Source: Octopus bimaculoides
Lineage: Eukaryota
Assembly (NCBI RefSeq): GCF_001194135.2
Contig: NC_068982.1
Location: 66,083,213 to 66,147,212 of the forward strand
Direction of reading: 5' to 3'
Length of the DNA: 64,000 bases
The notes under the pieces were generated by a model. That model saw only the letters and a list, made by a program, of their open reading frames with translations, was not told the DNA's origin and searched no databases. A program made the translations under genes and the position numbers. Every line of letters begins with the position of its first letter. Within the stretch, counting starts at the first letter, position 1. Shown in pieces: positions 3,741 to 63,739 of this stretch.

Positions 3741-4017
3741 TTGACAACTGCTTCACACATTTACAACATTGACAACTGCTTCACACACTTACAGCATTGA
3801 CAACTGCTTCACACACTTACAACATTGACAACTGCTTCACACACTTACAACATTGACAACTGCTTCACACACTTACAACATTGACAACTGCTTCACACAC
3901 TTACAACATTGACAACTGCTTCACACATTTACAACATGGACAACTGCTTCACACATTTACAACATGGACAACTGCTTCACACATTTACAACATGGACAAC
4001 TGCTTCACACATTTACA
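3741..4017. repeat. 28-bp minisatellite, about 10 copies
   Basis: Unit ttgacaactgcttcacacacttacaaca starting at 3741 and every 28 nt thereafter; head-to-tail with no spacers. Confidence 0.95.
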
Positions 4018-4044
4018 TTTTTCATGATCAACAAGGTACCAGAA

Positions 4045-6259: not shown

Positions 6260-6400
6260 ATGGCTGAAGCACACTCAGCAGTTGCATTCTCCTTCAGTGT
6301 GACTTCTGAAGGTCTCGATGTTAATGTCAACCGAGAGGTACTGGGCCTTATTTTCAAGAGTGGTGTCACATCATGGAAAAAACGTTTAGGAAGATTCAAA
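6260..6400 (+). CDS. CPT1: CPT1 coding exon 1 (exon starts at 6234 with 26 nt of 5' UTR)
   Basis: MAEAHSAVAFSFSVTSEGLDVNVNREVLGLIFKSGVTSWKKRLGRFK; acceptor tttcag at 6233, donor gtaaga at 6401; 47 codons, as in vertebrate CPT1A. Confidence 0.97.
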
Positions 6401-10440: not shown

Positions 10441-10807
10441 TGTCTCTCTCTCTCTCTCTTTTGTATTGAAAATGTGGTAGTTGTAAATGAACATCACCTT
10501 CATACAAGTGATGTGTTTGTTTTGAATATTTCATGGAAACATGTCTAGAAAATATTATCTTATTTGAAATAATTGAGGGTTGGTGAGAAGGAGGGCTTTC
10601 AGCCACAGAAAATGTGTCCCAGTGAATTTTGTCTGACCCATGCAAGCATGGAAAAATGGATATCAAAACAATGATAGAAAATGATGACAGTGGACACAAT
10701 CAGAATTTGAACTTGAAACTCTAGAGGTTCTTTGATAATAATTAATCTTCCATCTGTTTTCTCTTTGTAACATATGAAAATAATAATGCTTTACTTTATC
10801 ATTTCAG

Positions 10808-10944
10808 AATACATTCCGTACAGGTATCTACCCTGTCACACCTATGGGACTTGGGTTTATTGTTACACTAATAGCTTCTATGAAAGCAAAGAACTTTGCT
10901 CCAAGAATCACATATTTAGATAATATAGCAGACACCCTCCCAAA
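10808..10944 (+). CDS. CPT1: CPT1 coding exon 2 (TM1 region)
   Basis: NTFRTGIYPVTPMGLGFIVTLIASMKAKNFAPRITYLDNIADTLP+AA; atttcag / gtaagt; ends in phase 2. Confidence 0.93.
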
Positions 10945-13750: not shown

Positions 13751-15187
13751 ACTGATGCCTGAGGGTCACATTAAGTGGCTTCTAGCGGCAAAAGCCTCAA
13801 CTACTGCAGGCTTTTTTCCAGTTACTTCTGTGTACTCCTCTTATATGAAAAAAAAAAAAAAAAAATATTAGCAATAGAAGCTGTATTAATACCGAATGGC
13901 AATCTTTAAATCCTACTTAAAGATGGCCTAGTTCTCTATCAGTTATTATGCTGAGTGTCCCAGCTGGTTTGATCAACTAAACAGCCTGCTTGTGAAATTA
14001 ACATGCAAGTGGCTGATCACTCCACAGCCATGCGTACTCTTAATGTAATTCTCAGGGAAATTCAGTGTGACTCAGTGTGAATTACAGGTATAACTCATAT
14101 TTGCCAGCTGAGTGGACTGTGATTTCATCAAAAGAACCAGTTTTCTTTTTAACATTTTCGCTTTTTTGCTGAGCAAGAATACATCAGTGAAAGATGCACA
14201 AAATCTCACACACACATATAATGGGCTTCCACATAGTTTCTATCTTCGATATTCTACTCACAAGATATTGATCAACCTAAGACCATAGCAGATGACACTC
14301 ATTCGAATGTCTCACCATGAGATAAAACCTGGAGCCACGTGCTTGCAAAGTGAACTTCTTAGCCTCACAGCCATGCCTGTCTTACAAACTACTAAAAGTT
14401 AAGATGTTCAGTTTTTTTATATTTTTTATCATTGATTACTAAGCAAAACAAAGGAAAAAGTTATTGTTGTTTTTGTCTTTTGCTTTATCAAACTTTTTCT
14501 ACAGTAGGCCTACTTGTTTCAATATTAAGAATGCAGAGCAGCTGTATTGAGTAAATGTTATTTGTCAAATGAAATTAGTCACACACAAACTCCTACATAC
14601 ACACACATAAATGCAATAGAAATACTTTTACACACTTTCTTATACTCTTTTGCTGGTTTCAGTTTTTAGACTGTGGCCATGTTGGAGAACTGCCATTGAA
14701 GGTTTTCAGTTGGTTGCATCAACACAGAACTTAATCTAGTACTCATTTTACAATCCCTTAGGAACTGTAAATTCCACTTGCAATTAACAGACTTACCTCA
14801 GTATGCACACACAAAAGCATAGAAACACTCACTTGCACATGCAAAACTTTCAGGTTTTCCATATACTAAATTGTACTTGCAAGAAATTGGTCCATCTAAG
14901 GTTATGTGCATAAGACACCTGCCAAAGTTGGCATCCATTATGATCAAAGCATGTAATTGCAAAGCAAACTTCTTAGCTATTCATTCATATCTGTATCCTA
15001 AATTATATTATCAAATAATTTCTTCTGTATGTTGTTTGGTATAACAGAAGCAGTGCCATAGCCAGTGATATAAATAAATTCTGAAGTATGGTATTTTATT
15101 GTTGAAAACTATAATAGTTAGAAAGGTGCAAAATATATTTTAATACTAATTATATACTGATTGTTTTCATACTGTTAATATTGGGTT

Positions 15188-20422: not shown

Positions 20423-21163
20423 GTAAGTTGTTCATTATTTACATTTGATGGATATTTGTCCTCATCTTATTTGTTGTTAACACAATGTTTCAGCTGATGT
20501 ACCCTCCAGCCTTCATCAGGTATTTTGGGGAAATTTCAAACCTGGGCTCTCATTCCTAAGGTATTTTTCAATGTTATTATTATTATTATTCAGGTCACTG
20601 CCTGAAATTGAACTCAGAATCTTGGGGTTAGTAGCCCGTGCTCTTAAACACTATGCCATACGCCTGTTGTAAATATTCTTGCTTTTTATCTTGACCTTAT
20701 TTGTACTCGTTAAATTCCAGAGAAATGGCCTGGCACTCTGTCGGTTATGATGATGAGTTGATTCAACCACTGGAACAACCTGCTTATAAAATTAACATGC
20801 AAATGGCTGAGTGCTCCACAAACATGTGTATCCTTAACATAGTTCTCATGGAGTTTGAGCATTATACAAAATATGACAAAGCTGGCCCTTTGATTTGTCA
20901 GTTTAGATCTTGTGNNNNNNNNNNNNNNNNNNNNNNNNNNNNNNNNNNNNNNNNNNNNNNNNNNNNNNNNNNNNNNNNNNNNNNNNNNNNNNNNNNNNNN
21001 NNNNNNNNNNNNNNNNNNNNNNNNNNNNNNNNNNNNNNNNNNNNNNNNNNNNNNNNNNNNNNNNNNNNNNNNNNNNNNNNNNNNNNNNNNNNNNNNNNNN
21101 NNNNNNNNNNNNNNNNNNNNNNNNNNNNNNNNNNNNNNNNNNNNNNNNNNNNNNNNNNNNNNN

Positions 21164-21204
<41 letters not shown>

Positions 21205-30332: not shown

Positions 30333-30358
30333 GTTGGTTTTAATGCTGAACATTCATG
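30333..30358 (+). CDS. CPT1: CPT1 coding exon 13, 26-nt micro-exon carrying catalytic His472
   Basis: VGFNAEHS+TG; ttttag / gtaagt; required to join NGT to W-xDAP in frame. Confidence 0.95.
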
Positions 30359-32229
30359 GTAAGTTGTTCCACATTGATAGAAAGTTTGCTGTGTATTATT
30401 ATTATTAGTTCATGATTAAAGATGATACAGTAGTAGGAATCTATAGTGTGCTAGAGGACTATATGTATTTCAGTATTTAGTTGCAACTCTCAACCTGATG
30501 TCAAATTCTACCAATATATACTTTATTTTCCATCTTTCCAAGAGTGATGAAATAGGTAATAGTTATGTTCCAGTGGAATTTTAATGACTACTATCCATTC
30601 AGGTAAAGAATTATGGCTTTATGTCAATAGAAGAAATCATATTCAGTACATTGGTATTTTACCAGGCATGTTTTGTATGTTATTGATTATGTTCCTGACA
30701 ATAATTTTATGTGACCTCAAAATATTTTTTCTTATTTAGTAAATTGTTAATCTAATGTGACTGTTAATCTAAACATAGATTGTTTAAAACACTAGTGAAC
30801 TACTCAATAAATATTGGGTTGTCAGATAAATTAGGATTTTAATTGGGTTTTTTTTTTCTTCTTGGCACTCCATCATTTGTTTGAAAAGAGGTAAAATTTA
30901 TGACATCAAATTTTAAAAACTATGAAGAAAAATTATAGAGGAAGAATTGAGATATAAAAAATATTATGATAAAAATATTTTTCATGTTAATTCAAATTAC
31001 ACTAGAAAAGATTAAAATAAATGGAAAAGAAAATGAACAAATTAATCCAACAACCCAATAGTTAGTACACTGGTGAACAGCTCAGTGTTATGTCTGCCTA
31101 CTCTACTTTACGACTTCAGTTTGTGGGTGCAGGCATAGCTGTGTGGTTATGCAATTCACTTCAGAAGCAAATGGTTTTGTGTTCAACCTCACCATGCAGC
31201 ACCTTAGAAAAGTGACTTTTATCACAGCCTCAGGTTGACTAGAGCCTTATGTGGAAGCCTGTCTGAGGGACTATCAATCCCCTAGTTTAATAAAACCACC
31301 TGTTACAAACATCCAGCTGTAATCTCTGTTTTGAGAATAACTCCTGCTTTCTGTCAAATCACAAAGAAGTATTTAATTATAATCTAAAAATTTGGAAAAA
31401 AAAGAGAAAAATAAGTCGGTTTTATATAACTCTTATAACATTTAATACACCAATTTTTAATGAAATTGTTTAATTTTTTTTTTAAGCTTTACATATTTGT
31501 TTAAAAAGCAGTAAACTTACTTTTGCTCATGTCCTTTAAACTTTGAGTTCTTATATTTAACTGAGAGTGGCTATTAATGTTGTATAGGTAAAGTATTAAT
31601 GTTGTATTGGTAAAGTAGTTTAATAAAAGTCTATAGTATATGAAAACTGAGCAGATGATGATAATGGCTTAAGGTAATTGTTATAATAGTTTTATTGTTA
31701 TCTGTATATATAACCTTGAGTTAGGTTAACAAAATAGCCTGTATTAAATCAGCTACAAAAAAAAGACATCTCTGTATGTGTTGTCATTTGCCTGGGTATT
31801 CAGTCATAATTTGAATTTTTCTAATCATAAATCTCTATAAATTCTGTATATTTTAGAAAATATTTTTTGTTGTCATCATTGTTATTATTCAGCTCCAGGT
31901 CACTGGTCTCATTGTTATTATTCAGCTCCAGGTCACTCCTCTCACTAAATTAGCTAGAGAAAAGTTCAACCTAATTTCTCACACAGTCTAACACCAGTAC
32001 TTGATCATTGAGTGTCTTTAGCAGAGTCTACTCTGTTACACTGCATTAAATCAATGTAATCCTATATACAAACTGGGAACACTTTTATAAATGTTGTTTG
32101 AACTAGAAATTAACCATGGATTGGACACATCAAATGTTATGTTTCTTTCTAGTCAACATCTATATTTTCTCCAAATTACAAAAAAAAAAAAAAAAAATAG
32201 TGTTAATAATACTCTCTGTGTTGTTTCAG

Positions 32230-32295
32230 GGCAGATGCTCCAGTAACTGGGCATCTCTGGGAGTTTACTCTCAGTGAAGATATCCTAAACTTGCG
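32230..32295 (+). CDS. CPT1: CPT1 coding exon 14a (alternative)
   Basis: G+ADAPVTGHLWEFTLSEDILNL+CG; tttcag / gtatgc; 66 nt, phase 2 at both ends. Confidence 0.93.
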
Positions 32296-32363
32296 GTATG
32301 CAGAATTTCTAGTTGTCTGTTGTTTACTTTATTTGCACATTTTAAAATATAATCTGTGGGATT

Positions 32364-32388
32364 TGCATGAGGTTACTCATTCTGCATG
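32364..32388 (+). promoter_or_regulatory. Two Rbfox-type TGCATG intronic elements downstream of exon 14a
   Basis: TGCATG at 32364-32369 and 32383-32388; ACTAAT (QKI/How-type motif) at 32415-32420. Confidence 0.55.
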
Positions 32389-33103
32389 CTTGTGGAATAC
32401 TGTTGCACACTATCACTAATTATTACTTGCATATTTGTTATTATTTTTCATAACAGCAAACAGAACTCCTCTTTAATCAGTGCTAATTTTTTTACTTTAA
32501 TCAGTGCTATTTTTTTACTTTTCTACTTTTATAATTCTTTAGTTTCGTCTTCATCAGCTTATTTTCTACACTAAACAACATTTTAGAGGAATGCTTTTTA
32601 AAAGAACTATTCTACATTATTTCCTCCTCTTGAAGGTGGATGAGAAAAATGATATGGAAACATTTAGAAGATAAATGTTAGATAAGCAGAGTTTAATCGG
32701 GTGACAGATGGAATAGATTTCTGAGGAAATGACACTAGTTATATTAAAAGAGGCAAGGAAAAAGATAAATAATAATAATAATGGTTGACCTTTAATGTGA
32801 CAAAAGAATATTGGTAACCACTATAAGTGTTACCTTTCCATTTGTGAGAACAACGAATTGAACTTGGGGCTTGGAATAAGTCTTAGAAGCTGTTAAACTA
32901 CTATTTAGTTTTGTTTTTTTTTGTTTTTTTTTTGTAAATTCCAGACAGTTTGGGCATTATTAAATCTATAGAATTTCCAAAAGAAAGTTATTAGCCTTCT
33001 ATCTCCATAACTGCCATTAACAGAAGATATTGCTTAAGTATAACATTAGCTTCATAGTTATAGTTGGTGTCTGTTCAAATAATTCTTAAGCACTTTAAAA
33101 AAG

Positions 33104-33419
33104 AAAATCTTTTATTTTGTCTCTCTTTCTCTTTCTTACTCACTGAACATTTTATTATTTTCATGTCTTTCTCTATTTATTTCAACTGTTTACCAATCTA
33201 CTAACACATTTACTCACTAACCTACCTGCCCAATATCTTTCTTATCTGTTAACCAACATACTTATCTAATTGATGTTTTGGGTTATCCCTACTCTTATAA
33301 ATCATCGATACCTCCATCTGCCTACATTATCCACCTTCCTCAAATCTAATCTTTTGAAAATATTGTATGCTTTATCTCTGGTTTGTGTATCACATTTTGG
33401 CTCCACTGCACATCACTTC
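33104..33419 (+). promoter_or_regulatory. AG-exclusion zone with distal branch-point motifs upstream of exon 14b
   Basis: 316 nt with no AG dinucleotide (read line by line), pyrimidine-rich; TACTAAC at 33199-33205 and CACTAAC at 33215-33221. Confidence 0.6.
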
Positions 33420-33458
33420 AGCACTTTGCACCCTATTGTGTGGATTTTTTCTAAATAG

Positions 33459-33521
33459 GTCTGATGCACCAATTACAAGTCATCTGTGGGAATACTCCAT
33501 GCAACTATCCAATGAAGAAGG
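33459..33521 (+). CDS. CPT1: CPT1 coding exon 14b (alternative, paralogous to 14a)
   Basis: G+SDAPITSHLWEYSMQLSNEE+GG; aaatag / gtaata; 63 nt, phase 2 at both ends; joins exon 15 as ...NEEG-YTDDGH. Confidence 0.85.
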
Positions 33522-33666
33522 GTAATACGTCTTGTTCACCTTTTAATACTTGGTTTACTTTGAATAAAAACTACTACCTATAGCTTTTATAAATTCTATT
33601 GGAAAAGAAATGTGAAAATTAAATGAAGGAGGTTAATGTGTTTATGATGTTTAAAAAGTGTCATTA

Positions 33667-33756
33667 GCTTTGGCTGTACATATTCTGAAATTGGAATGAT
33701 ACAGAGATGGCCCCTGCACAAGTATGACATGCAAATTTATAGTGTTCCATATTTTT
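33667..33756 (+). pseudogene. U6: U6 snRNA pseudogene
   Basis: gctttggctgtacatattctgaaattggaatgatacagaga--tggcccctgcacaagtatgacatgcaaatttatagtgttccatattttt aligns to metazoan U6 from about nt 7 to the 3' U-tract. The ACAGAGA box is intact, AGATTAGCA is deleted and the CpGs are decayed. Confidence 0.92.
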
Positions 33757-33950: not shown

Positions 33951-34739
33951 TAGTCAGGGGTTACATGTAGGAGAGAATATTAACTGGGAGATTACATTTG
34001 AGGATGGAAAAGGATTCAGTTTGTACATTAGCATTGTTGGTGCTGGAGGAGTTCATGAGTCAAAAGGAGTTGCATGCTTGAAGTCATTGACAATGGCAAC
34101 TTGTGTGAGAGAAAGGTGAGTTATAACAAGTGTACTTGATGCAAGTTAAGGAGTTGTGAAACTGCTAGGGACTGGAGAAGTTTGGAGTGTGAAAGAGCTA
34201 GCAGTTGTTTCAGAGCAATATAGTTCTGAGGAATAAAGCTTATGTTTATTTATTTTTTGGTGTGTGTGTGTATGTGGAAGGATCATTAGTTGGCAGTGCC
34301 TCAGCATGGCCACAGCCCTCAAGCTGAAACTAGTAAAAGAATAGGGAGAGAGAGAGAATTCAGTAGGCTGTGTAAATATATTTGATAGGTGTTAACCCAT
34401 TTAGAAGAACAATATAAATAAAAGGTTAATGTACAATATAGGACTTAAGAGTGTGGGAACTTAATCCTGTGAAATAGAAACTGATGATCAGACTTTTACT
34501 TTTCTGAAAGTTATCCCATGCTAAGCATTAAATAGAATCCAACCCTCTATGTTTTGAGTTCAAATCCCACTGAGGTCAGCTTTGCATTTCATCCCTTTGA
34601 GGTTGGTAAAGTAAAACATCAGTTATGTACTGGGATTGATTAATCAACTAACCCTCTCTCCCTTCTCCTATCTCAGACCTTGCACCTGTAGTAGAAATAA
34701 TTATATATTTAAGGGTGGTGGATTGGCAGAATGATTACT

Positions 34740-35830
34740 GGGGTTTTCCGAAAATCTGCCCATCCATTAGATCGCCCATGAGCGTTTATTAGGATGGGCA
34801 GTTATTTGTGGTTAAAAATTGAATCAGAGTTAGTGTTCTTGTTTGCATTCTGTTTAGATGTTCATTTGCTCTACGTCTGCAGATAAATTTGAAGGATTTT
34901 TATTCCCAATAATGGAGTCGAAAGAAAATATATCAAAACATATTCAACAATCATATATCATTGGTGAAAAATTGAGTGCTATTAAACGAGTGAAAGAACA
35001 TTCTGGCAATTTATCTGCTGCCTCCAGAGACTTAGATATTGATAGAAAACGATTGAGAGAATGGTGCACAAAAGAAACTGAGTTAATATGTCAGACTAGA
35101 GAAAGCACAGATCGATTGGTAGAGGACCAGCACATAGTGATCTAGAGACTGAACTCTTACAGTGGATTGTTGTTCAGCGTGCAAACAATATAATTGTAAA
35201 TTATCGCCATTTATGGGAATATACTTTTGAATTGGTAAAAAGGTTTGGAATTGAAATGAACAGCTTTAGATGTTCTGATAAATGGATTTTCAATTTCATG
35301 AAATGGAATAAACTGACTGTGAGAAAGATTACACATGTTGGCCAAGCAGACAATAAAACACTTGGAGAAAAGGCACAAATCACCAGTGACTCTCTAGATA
35401 GCATTCCAGTATTAACAGCAGATAAGGATGCTGACTAGATTTATAATATGGATGAAACACCTGTATACGTTGACATGTTGAGTTCAACAACTATAGACTT
35501 TGTTGGCAATAAAAATGTAGATGCTAGCCATTGTTGTGCTACCAAAGTGTGTTTTAATGCTGCAGGAAAGGTGTTGAAGACAATGATCATTCTTAAAGGA
35601 TTGAAAAACGTATCTAAAATCAAGGTCCCAAAGAATATTTACTTAAGTCTCCAACAGGGGATCAATCACATATGAACTCATGCAGCTGTGGGCTGACAAA
35701 GTGTTTGGGCAGAGATCAGCACAACTATTCCATGCTCAAAATTCAGTGCTATTCATGGATGAATGCTCAGTGCACAAGAAAACAGAGCTTCTAGAAATGT
35801 TCAAACATAGGAATACAATTCTTAAACTCC
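34740..35830 (+). mobile_element. pogo-family transposon remnant with Brinker-like DNA-binding N-terminus
   Basis: EKLSAIKRVKEHSGNLSAASRDLDIDRKRLREW; YNMDETPVYVDM; LFMDECSVHK; multiple stops and frameshifts. Confidence 0.8.
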
Positions 35831-53030: not shown

Positions 53031-53102
53031 GATTCTGAAAGATTTAGCAAAAACATATTGAGCTCAATGAAGGATATAAAACAAATGTTAGAGACCTCAT
53101 AA
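53031..53102 (+). CDS. CPT1: CPT1 coding exon 21 (stop codon)
   Basis: DSERFSKNILSSMKDIKQMLETS*; ttctag acceptor; TAA at 53100-53102. Confidence 0.95.
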   Translation, partial: DSERFSKNILSSMKDIKQMLETS

Positions 53103-63480: not shown

Positions 63481-63739
63481 ANNNNNNNNNNNNNNNNNNN
63501 NNNNNNNNNNNNNNNNNNNNNNNNNNNNNNNNNNNNNNNNNNNNNNNNNNNNNNNNNNNNNNNNNNNNNNNNNNNNNNNNNNNNNNNNNNNNNNNNNNNN
63601 NNNNNNNNNNNNNNNNNNNNNNNNNNNNNNNNNNNNNNNNNNNNNNNNNNNNNNNNNNNNNNNNNNNNNNNNNNNNNNNNNNNNNNNNNNNNNNNNNNNN
63701 NNNNNNGGGGGGTTATTTGATTTCTAGACTAAACAGTGT

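What the first reader, a model, noticed from the sequence alone, without database searches (positions are those of the whole stretch)
33104..33458. 316-nt AG-free zone, distal TACTAAC branch motifs and a competing poison acceptor before exon 14b
Seen: there is no AG from 33104 to 33419, against only about 27 nt AG-free before 14a. TACTAAC (33199) and CACTAAC (33215) lie about 250 nt upstream of the acceptor. One CAG at 33419-33421 precedes the coding acceptor; using it adds 37 nt reading C-TLHPIVWIFSK-stop, and the stop TAG is the real acceptor itself. Established: long AG-exclusion zones with distant branch points mark regulated alternative exons such as vertebrate alpha-tropomyosin exon 3, and ACUAAY is also the QKI/How site. 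Inference: 14b inclusion is actively regulated and may be coupled to NMD.
Basis: partly seen in the sequence, partly recalled or inferred. Interest (0 to 1): 0.7.

Follow-up and report, generated by a model that had tools for sequence, protein, structure and literature searches.

The report
Conserved distal branch-site motifs before octopus CPT1 exon 14b
The AG-free stretch is real: it is the conserved splice-control region in front of one of two alternative exons of the octopus fat-burning enzyme gene CPT1, and it resembles known distant-branch-point and Quaking/SF1 switches, but whether the distal motifs are used and whether the "poison" acceptor matters is untested.

Summary

The gene is Octopus bimaculoides CPT1. 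Exons 14a (32230-32295) and 14b (33459-33521) are duplicated alternative exons that encode the residues just after the catalytic His. My two spliced models match RefSeq isoforms X1 and X2 exactly.

The zone is single-copy. It is AG-free over 356 nt in O. sinensis and O. vulgaris. In Argonauta hians a 335-nt AG-free run sits at the same place. There, the only conserved sequence in the 14a-14b intron beyond the roughly 140 nt next to 14a is the 25-nt ACTAAC block, at a similar distance from the acceptor.

Exon 14b is the only acceptor in the gene with no branch-like pentamer in its last 80 nt.

By the standard definition, however, the AG exclusion zone of 14b is only about 37 nt, because the CAG interrupts it. 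That CAG is not conserved in Argonauta, and I found no trace of its use.

Verdict: a real, conserved splicing control element, and a new member of known kinds. Regulation of 14b is supported. Use of the distal motifs as the branch point is plausible but unproven. NMD coupling is speculative.

The parts
30333..30358 (+). CPT1 exon 13, a 26-nt microexon (VGFNAEHS + TG) carrying the catalytic His; donor GT at 30359
   Evidence: Spliced model equals the RefSeq proteins exactly
32230..32295 (+). Exon 14a (66 nt; ADAPVTGHLWEFTLSEDILNL-R), upstream member of the alternative pair; strong acceptor, AG-free run of 27 nt
32296..32436 (+). Intron block downstream of 14a that is conserved in Argonauta; holds UGCAUG (32364-32369) and CACUAAU (32414-32420)
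   Evidence: blastn 75% over 253 columns, E 2.5e-42, including the exon; motif coordinates
33104..33419 (+). 316-nt AG-free, G-poor, pyrimidine-rich, single-copy segment
   Evidence: AG-free in O. sinensis and O. vulgaris (356 nt) and Argonauta (335 nt)
33136..33148 (+). TTACTCACTGAAC, a degenerate copy of the spacer-plus-motif TTACTCACTAAC at 33210-33221
   Evidence: lies in an 89-nt run identical across the three Octopus species
33199..33205 (+). TACTAAC, a perfect branch-site / STAR-protein core; branch A at 33204, 254 nt from the acceptor
33215..33221 (+). CACTAAC, the second core; branch A at 33220, 238 nt from the acceptor; 16 nt after the first core
33200..33224 (+). 25-nt block conserved in Argonauta hians (L003 10680-10704, 24 of 25 identical). 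It is the only conserved sequence in the 14a-14b intron beyond the ~140 nt adjoining 14a
   Evidence: E 2e-5; E 5e-5
33236..33247 (+). TCTTTCTTATCT, a pyrimidine tract directly downstream of the tandem motifs. It is longer in O. sinensis, and Argonauta has a C/U-rich tract at the same place
33346..33350 (+). CTAAT (A at 33349, -109). With TTTAT (A at 33374, -84), these are the branch-like pentamers nearest to the acceptor, and both lie upstream of the CAG
33411..33417 (+). CAUCACU, a weak non-consensus proximal branch candidate (A at 33415, 43 nt from the acceptor). The CAG lies only 5-6 nt downstream and so could be bypassed
   Evidence: Read from the sequence; inference
33419..33421 (+). CAG, the first AG downstream of every branch-like motif; candidate unproductive acceptor
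   Evidence: Identical in three Octopus species; TTC in Argonauta
33422..33458 (+). 37-nt extension if the CAG is used: frameshift, reads TLHPIVWIFSK-stop
33459..33521 (+). Exon 14b (63 nt; [21 protein letters not shown]); acceptor uag|G with a weak pyrimidine tract, donor GGgtaata
   Evidence: In Argonauta the peptide is 90% identical, with an 8:2 synonymous to non-synonymous ratio
41417..41501 (+). Exon 15. Joining exon 13 directly to it creates TGA at the junction

Best explanation
The window holds the whole CPT1 gene of Octopus bimaculoides. Exons 14a and 14b are an old tandem duplicate. They encode the 21-22 residues that follow the catalytic His, and one or the other is normally used.

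Exon 14b has a specialised 3' splice-site region. Close to the exon there is only a weak pyrimidine tract and no branch-like motif. About 240-255 nt upstream there is a tandem (U/C)ACUAAC unit followed by its own pyrimidine tract, embedded in an AG-depleted segment.

I read the tandem ACUAAC unit as the functional core. It is a high-affinity site for branch-point binding protein SF1 and U2, so it is a distant branch-site unit. It also has exactly the form of a bipartite response element for a STAR protein (Quaking / How). Competition at this unit would set how often 14b is chosen instead of the strong default exon 14a. The AG depletion downstream of the unit would then be the footprint of 3' splice-site scanning.

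In Octopus one CAG at -37 interrupts the tract. Either it is used and gives an unproductive mRNA, or productive splicing uses a weak proximal branch (around A33415) that lies close enough to the CAG to bypass it.

Shown: the anatomy, the isoforms, the conservation and the AG depletion. Inferred: which A is the branch, which protein binds, and any NMD.
For: - Gene and isoforms: my spliced models are exact matches to XP_014771929.1 (X1, with 14a) and XP_052833834.1 (X2, with 14b).
- 14b is conserved in Argonauta with 8 synonymous and 2 non-synonymous codon differences.
- Between exon 13 and exon 15, the single-copy non-exonic blocks that Octopus and Argonauta share are the 140 nt after 14a and the 25-nt ACTAAC block. 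The block is 24 of 25 identical (E 2e-5). Argonauta has three motifs, with branch As 259, 275 and 281 nt from the acceptor, against 238 and 254 nt in Octopus.
- A pyrimidine tract follows the block in both genera.
- AG depletion between the block and the acceptor: in Octopus 1 of 25 G is preceded by A (background 0.32); in Argonauta 1 of 27 (background 0.285).
- 14b is the only one of 21 acceptors with no YTNAY in its last 80 nt. Other introns of the gene use TACTAAT or CTGACTAAT close to the acceptor, so ACUAAY is a natural octopus branch sequence.
- Downstream copies of this exon have long AG-free runs in other lineages: Argonauta 131, Patella 124 (with TACTAAT at its 5' end), Lymnaea 96 and 114, Apis 93, Pecten 83. 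First copies have 16-33 nt (Apis: 3 raw, 77 under the published rule).
- Literature: long AG exclusion zones mark distant branch points and alternative exons (PMC1431707). Tandem ACUAAC branch sites are the substrate of SF1/QKI competition in RAI14 (PMC13004596). Choice between Drosophila CPT1 exons 6A and 6B is physiologically regulated (PMC10879661).
Against: - Measured from the used acceptor, the AG-free run in Octopus is only about 37 nt. Scanning from 33204 or 33220 would reach the CAG first.
- Argonauta also has one AG (AAG at -131) between the block and the acceptor. AG exclusion between motif and true acceptor is therefore not strict in either genus.
- The AG-free run extends 95 nt (Octopus) to 182 nt (Argonauta) upstream of the motifs, which scanning does not predict and which points to a compositional component.
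- The three Octopus species are too close to be informative: introns are about 91% identical overall, and an 89-nt identical run is not exceptional.
- A tandem ACTAAY pair somewhere in 64 kb is not improbable (P 0.35).
- There are no lariat, CLIP or RNA-seq data. Nothing here shows that a STAR protein binds.
Confidence: 0.5

Rival explanations
1. Regulator site only. The tandem ACUAAC block is a conserved intronic silencer or enhancer bound by a Quaking/How-type STAR dimer (or another factor), and it never serves as the branch. Productive 14b splicing uses a weak non-consensus proximal branch (for example A33415, or A33430-33435). The long AG-poor, pyrimidine-rich tract is a binding platform (for PTB-like or other proteins), not a scanning footprint.
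For: - The CAG at -37 in Octopus and the AAG at -131 in Argonauta lie between the block and the true acceptor.
- The spacing of the cores (16 nt) and the conserved spacer fit the bipartite ACUAAY-N(1-20)-YAAY element (PMC13004596).
- A second conserved ACUAAU lies downstream of 14a. One STAR factor could then favour 14a and repress 14b, following the known dependence of its effect on binding position.
- UCUU and UCUCU motifs are 3-5 fold enriched in the Octopus zone.
- AG depletion also occurs upstream of the block.
Against: - There is no YTNAY motif at all in the last 80 nt before 14b, and the proximal candidates are poor.
- The block has its own downstream pyrimidine tract in both genera, as a true branch unit would.
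- UCUU enrichment is not seen in Argonauta.
Confidence: 0.3
2. Regulated poison acceptor. The distal branch unit and the first AG (CAG 33419-21) form a complete upstream 3' splice site. Its use yields a 37-nt longer exon with a premature stop, so 14b output is tuned by unproductive splicing and NMD.
For: - The CAG is the first AG after every branch-like motif.
- Its context (cacaucacuucag|C) is at least as good as that of the true acceptor.
- The frameshift and stop are verified, and the stop lies far upstream of the last junction.
- The CAG sits in a 140-nt run identical across three Octopus species.
- Argonauta also has exactly one AG downstream of its motif block.
Against: - The CAG is TTC in Argonauta, and the Argonauta AAG is not homologous to it and has a poor context (aag|aaaaaaaaa).
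- No protein with the junction peptide turned up in 5.8 billion clusters, and there is no exact match to the predicted truncated products of O. bimaculoides or O. sinensis. Both tests have low power for an NMD substrate.
Confidence: 0.12
3. Composition and chance. This is a G-poor stretch of intron that happens to lack AG, and the ACTAAC pair has no function.
For: - The zone has only 23 G. The mononucleotide-shuffle P of 0.0012 is not extreme for a 64-kb window.
- A tandem ACTAAY pair somewhere in the window has P 0.35.
- Conservation within the genus Octopus is no higher than the intron background.
Against: - There is an independent AG-free run at the same place in Argonauta (6.8 AG expected, none observed), plus a 24 of 25 identical motif block in an otherwise unalignable intron.
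- It is the longest AG-free run in the loci of all three Octopus species.
- 14b alone lacks a proximal branch motif.
Confidence: 0.07

Closest known systems
Distant-branch-point exons with AG exclusion zones (vertebrate alpha-tropomyosin exon 3, PTB exon 11, GABBR1 exon 23, OGDH exons 4a/4b; Gooding et al. 2006, PMC1431707; Kralovicova et al. 2021, PMC7969005)
   Same: - An alternative, duplicated exon.
- A consensus branch sequence with an adjacent pyrimidine tract hundreds of nt upstream.
- A long AG-free segment, with normal AG density further upstream.
   Different: - In Octopus the AG-free segment ends at a CAG 37 nt before the used acceptor, so the formal zone is short. In Argonauta it is 131 nt, but the motif block still lies beyond an AAG.
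- The motifs lie 95-180 nt inside the AG-free run, not at its 5' edge.
- The branch candidates are about 900-2300 nt from the upstream donor, so they cannot enforce mutual exclusion by steric hindrance as in alpha-tropomyosin or OGDH.
SF1/Quaking competition at tandem ACUAAC branch sites (RAI14 intron 10; Pereira de Castro et al., eLife 2026, PMC13004596); bipartite Quaking/How/ASD-2 response element
   Same: - Two perfect ACUAAC cores within 20 nt, upstream of an alternative exon, and evolutionarily conserved.
- ACUAAY is also a natural branch sequence in this gene.
   Different: - The RAI14 motifs are 34 and 43 nt from the acceptor; here they are 238 and 254 nt away.
- There are no binding or knock-down data for any cephalopod STAR protein.
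CPT1 (whd) alternative exons 6A/6B of Drosophila and the same exon pair in other protostomes
   Same: - Duplicated exons at the same codon position (…AEHSW|ADAP…), in the same phase.
- The first copy encodes 22 aa and the second 21 aa in Octopus, Patella, Pecten, Lingula and Apis.
- In the fly, the choice changes enzyme activity and responds to starvation, SR protein 9G8 and PKA (PMC10879661).
   Different: - I did not align the Drosophila gene itself. Equivalence to 6A/6B rests on bee and other insect 'whd' isoforms.
- The cis elements described here (distal ACUAAC block) have not been reported for the fly in the papers I read.
Unproductive alternative 3' splice sites coupled to NMD
   Same: An upstream AG that adds 37 nt, shifts the frame and brings an early stop.
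   Different: There is no evidence of use, and it is not conserved outside the genus Octopus.

Membership tests
Distant-branch-point / AG-exclusion-zone exon (Gooding 2006) | [quoted passage not shown] | tested here: not met
   Octopus 14b: first upstream AG at -37. Argonauta 14b meets it (131 nt). The 316 nt corresponds to the second AG interval.
Distant-branch-point / AG-exclusion-zone exon (Gooding 2006) | Consensus branch sequence with an adjacent pyrimidine tract near the 5' end of the AG-free zone, and normal AG density upstream | tested here: inconclusive
   UACUAAC and CACUAAC plus UCUUUCUUAUCU are present, but 95 nt inside the zone. AGs are frequent upstream of 33103.
Distant-branch-point / AG-exclusion-zone exon (Gooding 2006) | Lariat branch mapped to the distal adenosine | not testable with these tools
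   No RNA data are available.
Distant-branch-point / AG-exclusion-zone exon (Gooding 2006) | No usable branch site close to the acceptor | tested here: met
   No YTNAY in the last 80 nt; the nearest are at -84 and -109. All 20 other acceptors have at least one. This is a motif-based test only.
Bipartite STAR (Quaking/How) response element / SF1-QKI branch-site competition | [quoted passage not shown] | tested here: met
   ACUAAC at 33200 and 33216. Argonauta has three cores.
Bipartite STAR (Quaking/How) response element / SF1-QKI branch-site competition | The motif coincides with the functional branch site just upstream of the regulated exon | tested here: inconclusive
   It lies upstream of the regulated exon but 238-254 nt away, against 34-43 nt in RAI14.
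Bipartite STAR (Quaking/How) response element / SF1-QKI branch-site competition | Binding by a STAR protein, and a change in exon inclusion when it is depleted | not testable with these tools
   No CLIP or knock-down data exist for cephalopods.
Mutually exclusive exon pair of protostome CPT1 | Tandem homologous exons in the same phase, each used alone in an annotated isoform | tested here: met
   66 and 63 nt, both entering in phase 2. Isoforms X1 and X2 match exactly.
Mutually exclusive exon pair of protostome CPT1 | Same position as the pair in insects and other protostomes | tested here: met
   Isoform pairs and 'both-included' models in bees, wasps, ants, gastropods, bivalves, Lingula and a millipede.
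Mutually exclusive exon pair of protostome CPT1 | Strict mutual exclusion (double inclusion or double skipping is prevented or destroyed) | tested here: inconclusive
   Skipping both gives TGA at the 13/15 junction. Including both stays in frame (+21 aa) and is annotated as O. sinensis X1. No steric, structural or NMD mechanism against double inclusion was found.
Poison 3' splice site coupled to NMD | The alternative acceptor introduces a premature stop upstream of later junctions | tested here: met
Poison 3' splice site coupled to NMD | The junction is used in vivo and stabilised when NMD is blocked | tested here: inconclusive
   No matching product in the protein collections. These tests have low power.

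The most novel reading that the evidence does not exclude
An ancient, protostome-wide CPT1 exon switch is controlled in octopods by a distal tandem ACUAAC module. This module is both the branch-site unit of exon 14b and a Quaking/How response element. Because the first AG downstream of it is not the coding acceptor (CAG at -37 in Octopus, AAG at -131 in Argonauta), use of the distal branch gives unproductive mRNA, whereas productive 14b needs a second, weak proximal unit. That would be a two-tier 3' splice site that couples isoform choice to transcript destruction.
Probability: 0.15. Interest if true: 0.65.

Novelty: new member of a known kind. Interest (0 to 1): 0.45.

Why it matters
CPT1 gates fatty-acid entry into mitochondria. 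Vertebrates have separate liver and muscle genes. Flies, and as shown here octopods and many other protostomes, instead swap one small exon next to the catalytic His.

A conserved and sharply defined cis element in front of the downstream exon gives a direct handle on how that metabolic switch is set in cephalopods. It also offers a natural test of whether SF1/Quaking competition at ACUAAC sites, recently shown in mammals, works at a distance and outside vertebrates.

The recurrent long AG-free tracts before the second exon copy in molluscs and a bee suggest that the architecture may be old.

Tried and rejected
- Third exon copy: a tblastn hit 'RHLWEY' at 35205 lies inside a transposon-like ORF that O. 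sinensis lacks. It is not an exon.
- Repetitive element: the zone has no other copy in the window or in eight related loci.
- RNA structure that hides the CAG or brings the distal motifs close: folds of 33340-33470 and 33180-33470 are no better than shuffles (z = 0.10 and -0.19).
- Docking/selector pairing as in Dscam or 14-3-3: duplex energies between the intron 13 start, the 14a flanks, the 14b flanks and the exon 15 upstream region were all within shuffles (z from -1.9 to +0.2; the first attempt, timed out).
- Known RNA families in the zone: none. The only Rfam hit is a U6-like element downstream of 14b.
- Conservation within the genus Octopus as evidence: rejected as too weak, because introns are about 91% identical overall.
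- Search for the poison-junction peptide and for the exact truncated products: nothing found.
- Loci for Ostrea, Liolophura and Haliotis: not on record.
- A C. elegans CPT paper (PMC12846820) turned out not to concern this exon pair.

Full report
**1. The observation**

On the + strand there is an AG at 33102-3, the next at 33420-1, and the next at 33457-8. So 33104-33419 is 316 nt without AG.

TACTAAC (33199-33205) and CACTAAC (33215-33221) are present. Their branch adenosines lie 254 and 238 nt from the acceptor G. The AG-free run before 14a is 27 nt.

Joining 30358 to 33422 reads ...AEHS-C-TLHPIVWIFSK-stop, and the stop TAG overlaps the true acceptor.

All other AG-free runs of similar length in the window are N gaps, simple repeats or a tandem repeat. 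Among dinucleotides of similar frequency, none has a longer non-N free run.

The zone is G-poor (A77 C79 G23 T137), and AG is the only absent dinucleotide. A mononucleotide shuffle expects 5.6 AG, with P(0) = 0.0012. None of the 23 G follows an A, against 32% window-wide (P = 1.3e-4). On its own this is suggestive rather than overwhelming for a 64-kb window.

**2. What the locus is**

The peptide across 30333-30358 and 33459-33521 ([21 protein letters not shown]...) is the catalytic-site segment of carnitine palmitoyltransferase 1.

I first mapped exons with a human CPT1A sequence recalled from memory, used only as a lead, and then with database homologues. This gave a complete model: ATG at 6260, stop at 53102, and 21 coding exons plus a duplicated exon 14.

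The two spliced products are exact matches to RefSeq isoforms of Octopus bimaculoides:

- X1, 767 aa, with 14a (XP_014771929.1)
- X2, 766 aa, with 14b (XP_052833834.1 / XP_014771931.1)

Exon 14a is 32230-32295 (66 nt) and exon 14b is 33459-33521 (63 nt). Both enter with one base completing the Trp codon and leave with two bases. Four outcomes follow:

- Either exon alone keeps the frame.
- Both together add 21 aa in frame.
- Skipping both creates TGA at the 13/15 junction.

O. sinensis has the 14a and 14b isoforms, and also a 788-aa model that is exactly 14a+14b in tandem.

**3. The exon pair is old**

Isoform pairs, or 'both-included' models, at exactly this position occur in bees, wasps, ants, a beetle, gastropods, bivalves, Lingula and a millipede.

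In genomic loci I fetched, the first copy encodes 22 aa and the second 21 aa in Octopus, Patella, Pecten, Lingula and Apis. Lymnaea has three copies.

In Drosophila, the choice between CPT1 exons 6A and 6B changes enzyme activity and responds to starvation, 9G8 and PKA (PMC10879661). That 6A/6B is this same pair is my inference from the insect 'whd' isoforms. I did not align the fly gene.

**4. Conservation of the zone**

I fetched the orthologous loci of O. sinensis (L001) and O. vulgaris (L002). In both, the zone aligns at about 95% identity and stays AG-free. Because the AG at 33102 is absent there, the run is 356 nt, the longest in each locus.

These species are too close for this to carry much weight. 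Introns are about 91% identical overall, and an 89-nt identical run around the motifs is not exceptional. The 140-nt identical run across the acceptor (33353-33492) is only borderline.

The informative comparison is Argonauta hians (L003). It has both 14a and 14b. Its 14b peptide is [21 protein letters not shown], with 8 synonymous and 2 non-synonymous codon differences from Octopus. So 14b is a translated exon under purifying selection.

Between exon 13 and exon 15, the only single-copy non-exonic sequences the two genera share are (confirmed; a 70-nt match upstream of exon 15 looks like a repeat, having a second copy elsewhere in the locus):

- about 140 nt downstream of 14a
- a 25-nt block, ACTAAC-n-CATTTACTCACTAACCTA (33200-33224 against L003 10680-10704; 24 of 25 identical; E 2e-5)

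Argonauta has three cores (TACTAAC, CACTAAC, CACTAAC), with branch As 281, 275 and 259 nt from its acceptor.

Around the block, Argonauta has a 335-nt AG-free run (10492-10826; 6.8 AG expected), then one AAG, then 129 AG-free nt up to the acceptor.

A pyrimidine tract follows the block in both genera.

The element survives.

**5. Does it work as a distant branch point?**

In favour:

- 14b is the only one of the gene's 21 acceptors with no YTNAY pentamer in its last 80 nt. The nearest are UUUAU at -84 and CUAAU at -109.
- Other introns of this gene place TACTAAT or CTGACTAAT 20-25 nt from their acceptors, so ACUAAY is a normal octopus branch sequence.
- In Octopus the AG depletion is concentrated downstream of the block. 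There, 19 G occur and none is preceded by A, with 4.6 AG expected. The 95 nt upstream hold only 4 G and are uninformative.
- From block to acceptor, 1 of 25 G (Octopus) and 1 of 27 G (Argonauta) follow an A, against backgrounds of 0.32 and 0.285.
- In other lineages the downstream exon copy also has a long AG-free run, while the first copy does not:

| Lineage | First copy (nt) | Downstream copy or copies (nt) |
|---|---|---|
| Argonauta | 33 | 131 |
| Patella | 27 | 124 (TACTAAT right at its 5' edge) |
| Lymnaea | 29 | 96 and 114 |
| Pecten | 16 | 83 |
| Apis | 3 (77 under the published rule) | 93 |
| Lingula (the exception) | 30 | 21 |

Against:

- The published definition measures the AG exclusion zone from the used acceptor to the first upstream AG (PMC1431707). 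For Octopus 14b that is about 37 nt.
- Every branch-like motif lies upstream of the CAG at 33419-21. Linear scanning should therefore pick the CAG, not the coding acceptor.
- Argonauta likewise has one AG between its block and its acceptor.
- The AG-free run continues 95-182 nt upstream of the motifs, which scanning does not explain.
- The distal motifs are about 900 nt (O. bimaculoides), 1300 nt (Argonauta) and 2300 nt (O. sinensis) from the 14a donor. The steric mechanism of alpha-tropomyosin or OGDH (PMC7969005) cannot apply.

**6. The ACUAAC pair as a protein switch**

Two ACUAAC cores 16 nt apart are exactly the bipartite element bound by dimeric Quaking/How/ASD-2. A recent study showed that QKI and SF1 compete for tandem ACUAAC branch sites upstream of RAI14 exon 11. 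Either core can serve as the branch, and both together give strong QKI repression (PMC13004596).

The conserved spacer and the third core in Argonauta fit a protein-binding platform.

A further conserved ACUAAU (32415) and a conserved UGCAUG (32364) lie in the block downstream of 14a. One STAR factor could then favour 14a and repress 14b. This is inference, and no binding data exist.

**7. The CAG**

The CAG sits in a good context, is identical in the three Octopus species, and would give a premature stop. In Argonauta the homologous position reads TTC.

I searched the protein collection for the junction peptide and for the exact predicted truncated products of O. bimaculoides and O. sinensis, and found nothing. 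Both tests have low power for an NMD substrate.

If productive 14b splicing bypasses the CAG, the simplest way is a weak branch within about 15 nt upstream of it. An example is cAUCACu with A33415, which is 43 nt from the acceptor. This is a reading of the sequence only.

**8. Alternatives examined and dropped**

- No stable RNA structure around the CAG or between the motifs and the acceptor.
- No docking/selector complementarity.
- No repeat family.
- No Rfam family in the zone.

**9. Verdict**

It marks a real, conserved cis-regulatory region of an alternative exon in an ancient CPT1 exon pair.

Active regulation of 14b is well supported indirectly. The distal ACUAAC unit is very likely functional. 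Whether it acts as the branch site, as a STAR-protein site, or as both cannot be decided from sequence. The 'AG exclusion zone' label is formally wrong for Octopus because of the CAG. NMD coupling is an untested possibility.

It is a new member of known kinds (distant-branch-point / AG-exclusion architecture, and ACUAAC SF1/QKI elements), of moderate interest.

Noticed in passing
window 33660-33756 (+); L001 32910-33008; L002 33960-34058: A U6 snRNA-like element lies 138 nt downstream of the 14b donor, in the sense orientation. It matches Rfam RF00026 at 57.6-62.2 bits (gathering score 44) over the full model, but has a 9-nt deletion (AGAUUAGCA) and a broken 5' stem, so it is probably a U6 pseudogene. 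It is present in three Octopus species and absent in Argonauta.
   Followed up: partly
window 30358 / 41417 junction: Skipping both 14a and 14b joins TG to A and creates a TGA stop exactly at the junction. Double skipping is therefore self-terminating. Double inclusion stays in frame (+21 aa) and is annotated as O. sinensis isoform X1 (P0125). Nothing found here would prevent double inclusion.
   Followed up: partly
window 30333-30358: The catalytic His of CPT1 (AEHS) is encoded on a 26-nt microexon.
   Followed up: no
window 32296-32436; L003 9364-9479: About 140 nt of intron downstream of 14a is conserved between Octopus and Argonauta. It includes UGCAUG (32364, an RBFOX-type motif) and CACUAAU (32414). 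A second UGCAUG at 32383 is not conserved. Another UGCAUG at 34071 lies in a 130-nt block identical across the three Octopus species, downstream of 14b.
   Followed up: partly
L003-L008 and proteins P0121-P0245: The duplicated exon at this codon position is found across protostomes: insects, a millipede, gastropods, bivalves, cephalopods and Lingula. The first copy is 22 aa and the second 21 aa. In 6 of 7 lineages the downstream copy has the longer AG-free run upstream (35-131 nt against 16-33 nt, or 77 nt for Apis under the published rule; 83-131 nt in five of them).
   Followed up: partly
L004 9395, 12506, 14804: Lymnaea stagnalis has three copies of the exon. Copy 2 is preceded by an array of roughly 20-nt repeats, each carrying the branch consensus CTGAC, in an AG-poor 300 nt. 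Copy 3 and its upstream region look like a recent local duplication.
   Followed up: no
window 35192-36237 and about 32684-32698: There are lineage-specific insertions. A roughly 1-kb segment with a transposase-like ORF (it includes the chance 'RHLWEY' hit at 35205) is absent from O. sinensis. O. sinensis and O. vulgaris carry about 1.37 kb extra between 14a and 14b.
   Followed up: partly
L003 11410-11482: There is a tRNA-like hit (Rfam RF00005, 40 bits) in the Argonauta intron downstream of 14b, possibly a tRNA-derived repeat.
   Followed up: no
window about 1807-1925, 20915-21165, 44480-44570, 63482-63700; 3793-4034: The window contains assembly gaps (runs of N) flanked by simple repeats, and a tandem repeat with a roughly 24-nt unit. 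These account for the other long AG-free runs.
   Followed up: yes
L003 12225-12429: The whole 205-nt intron between exons 15 and 16 of Argonauta CPT1 is AG-free. The longest AG-free run in that locus (14262-14601) lies near the 3' end of the gene and was not examined.
   Followed up: no
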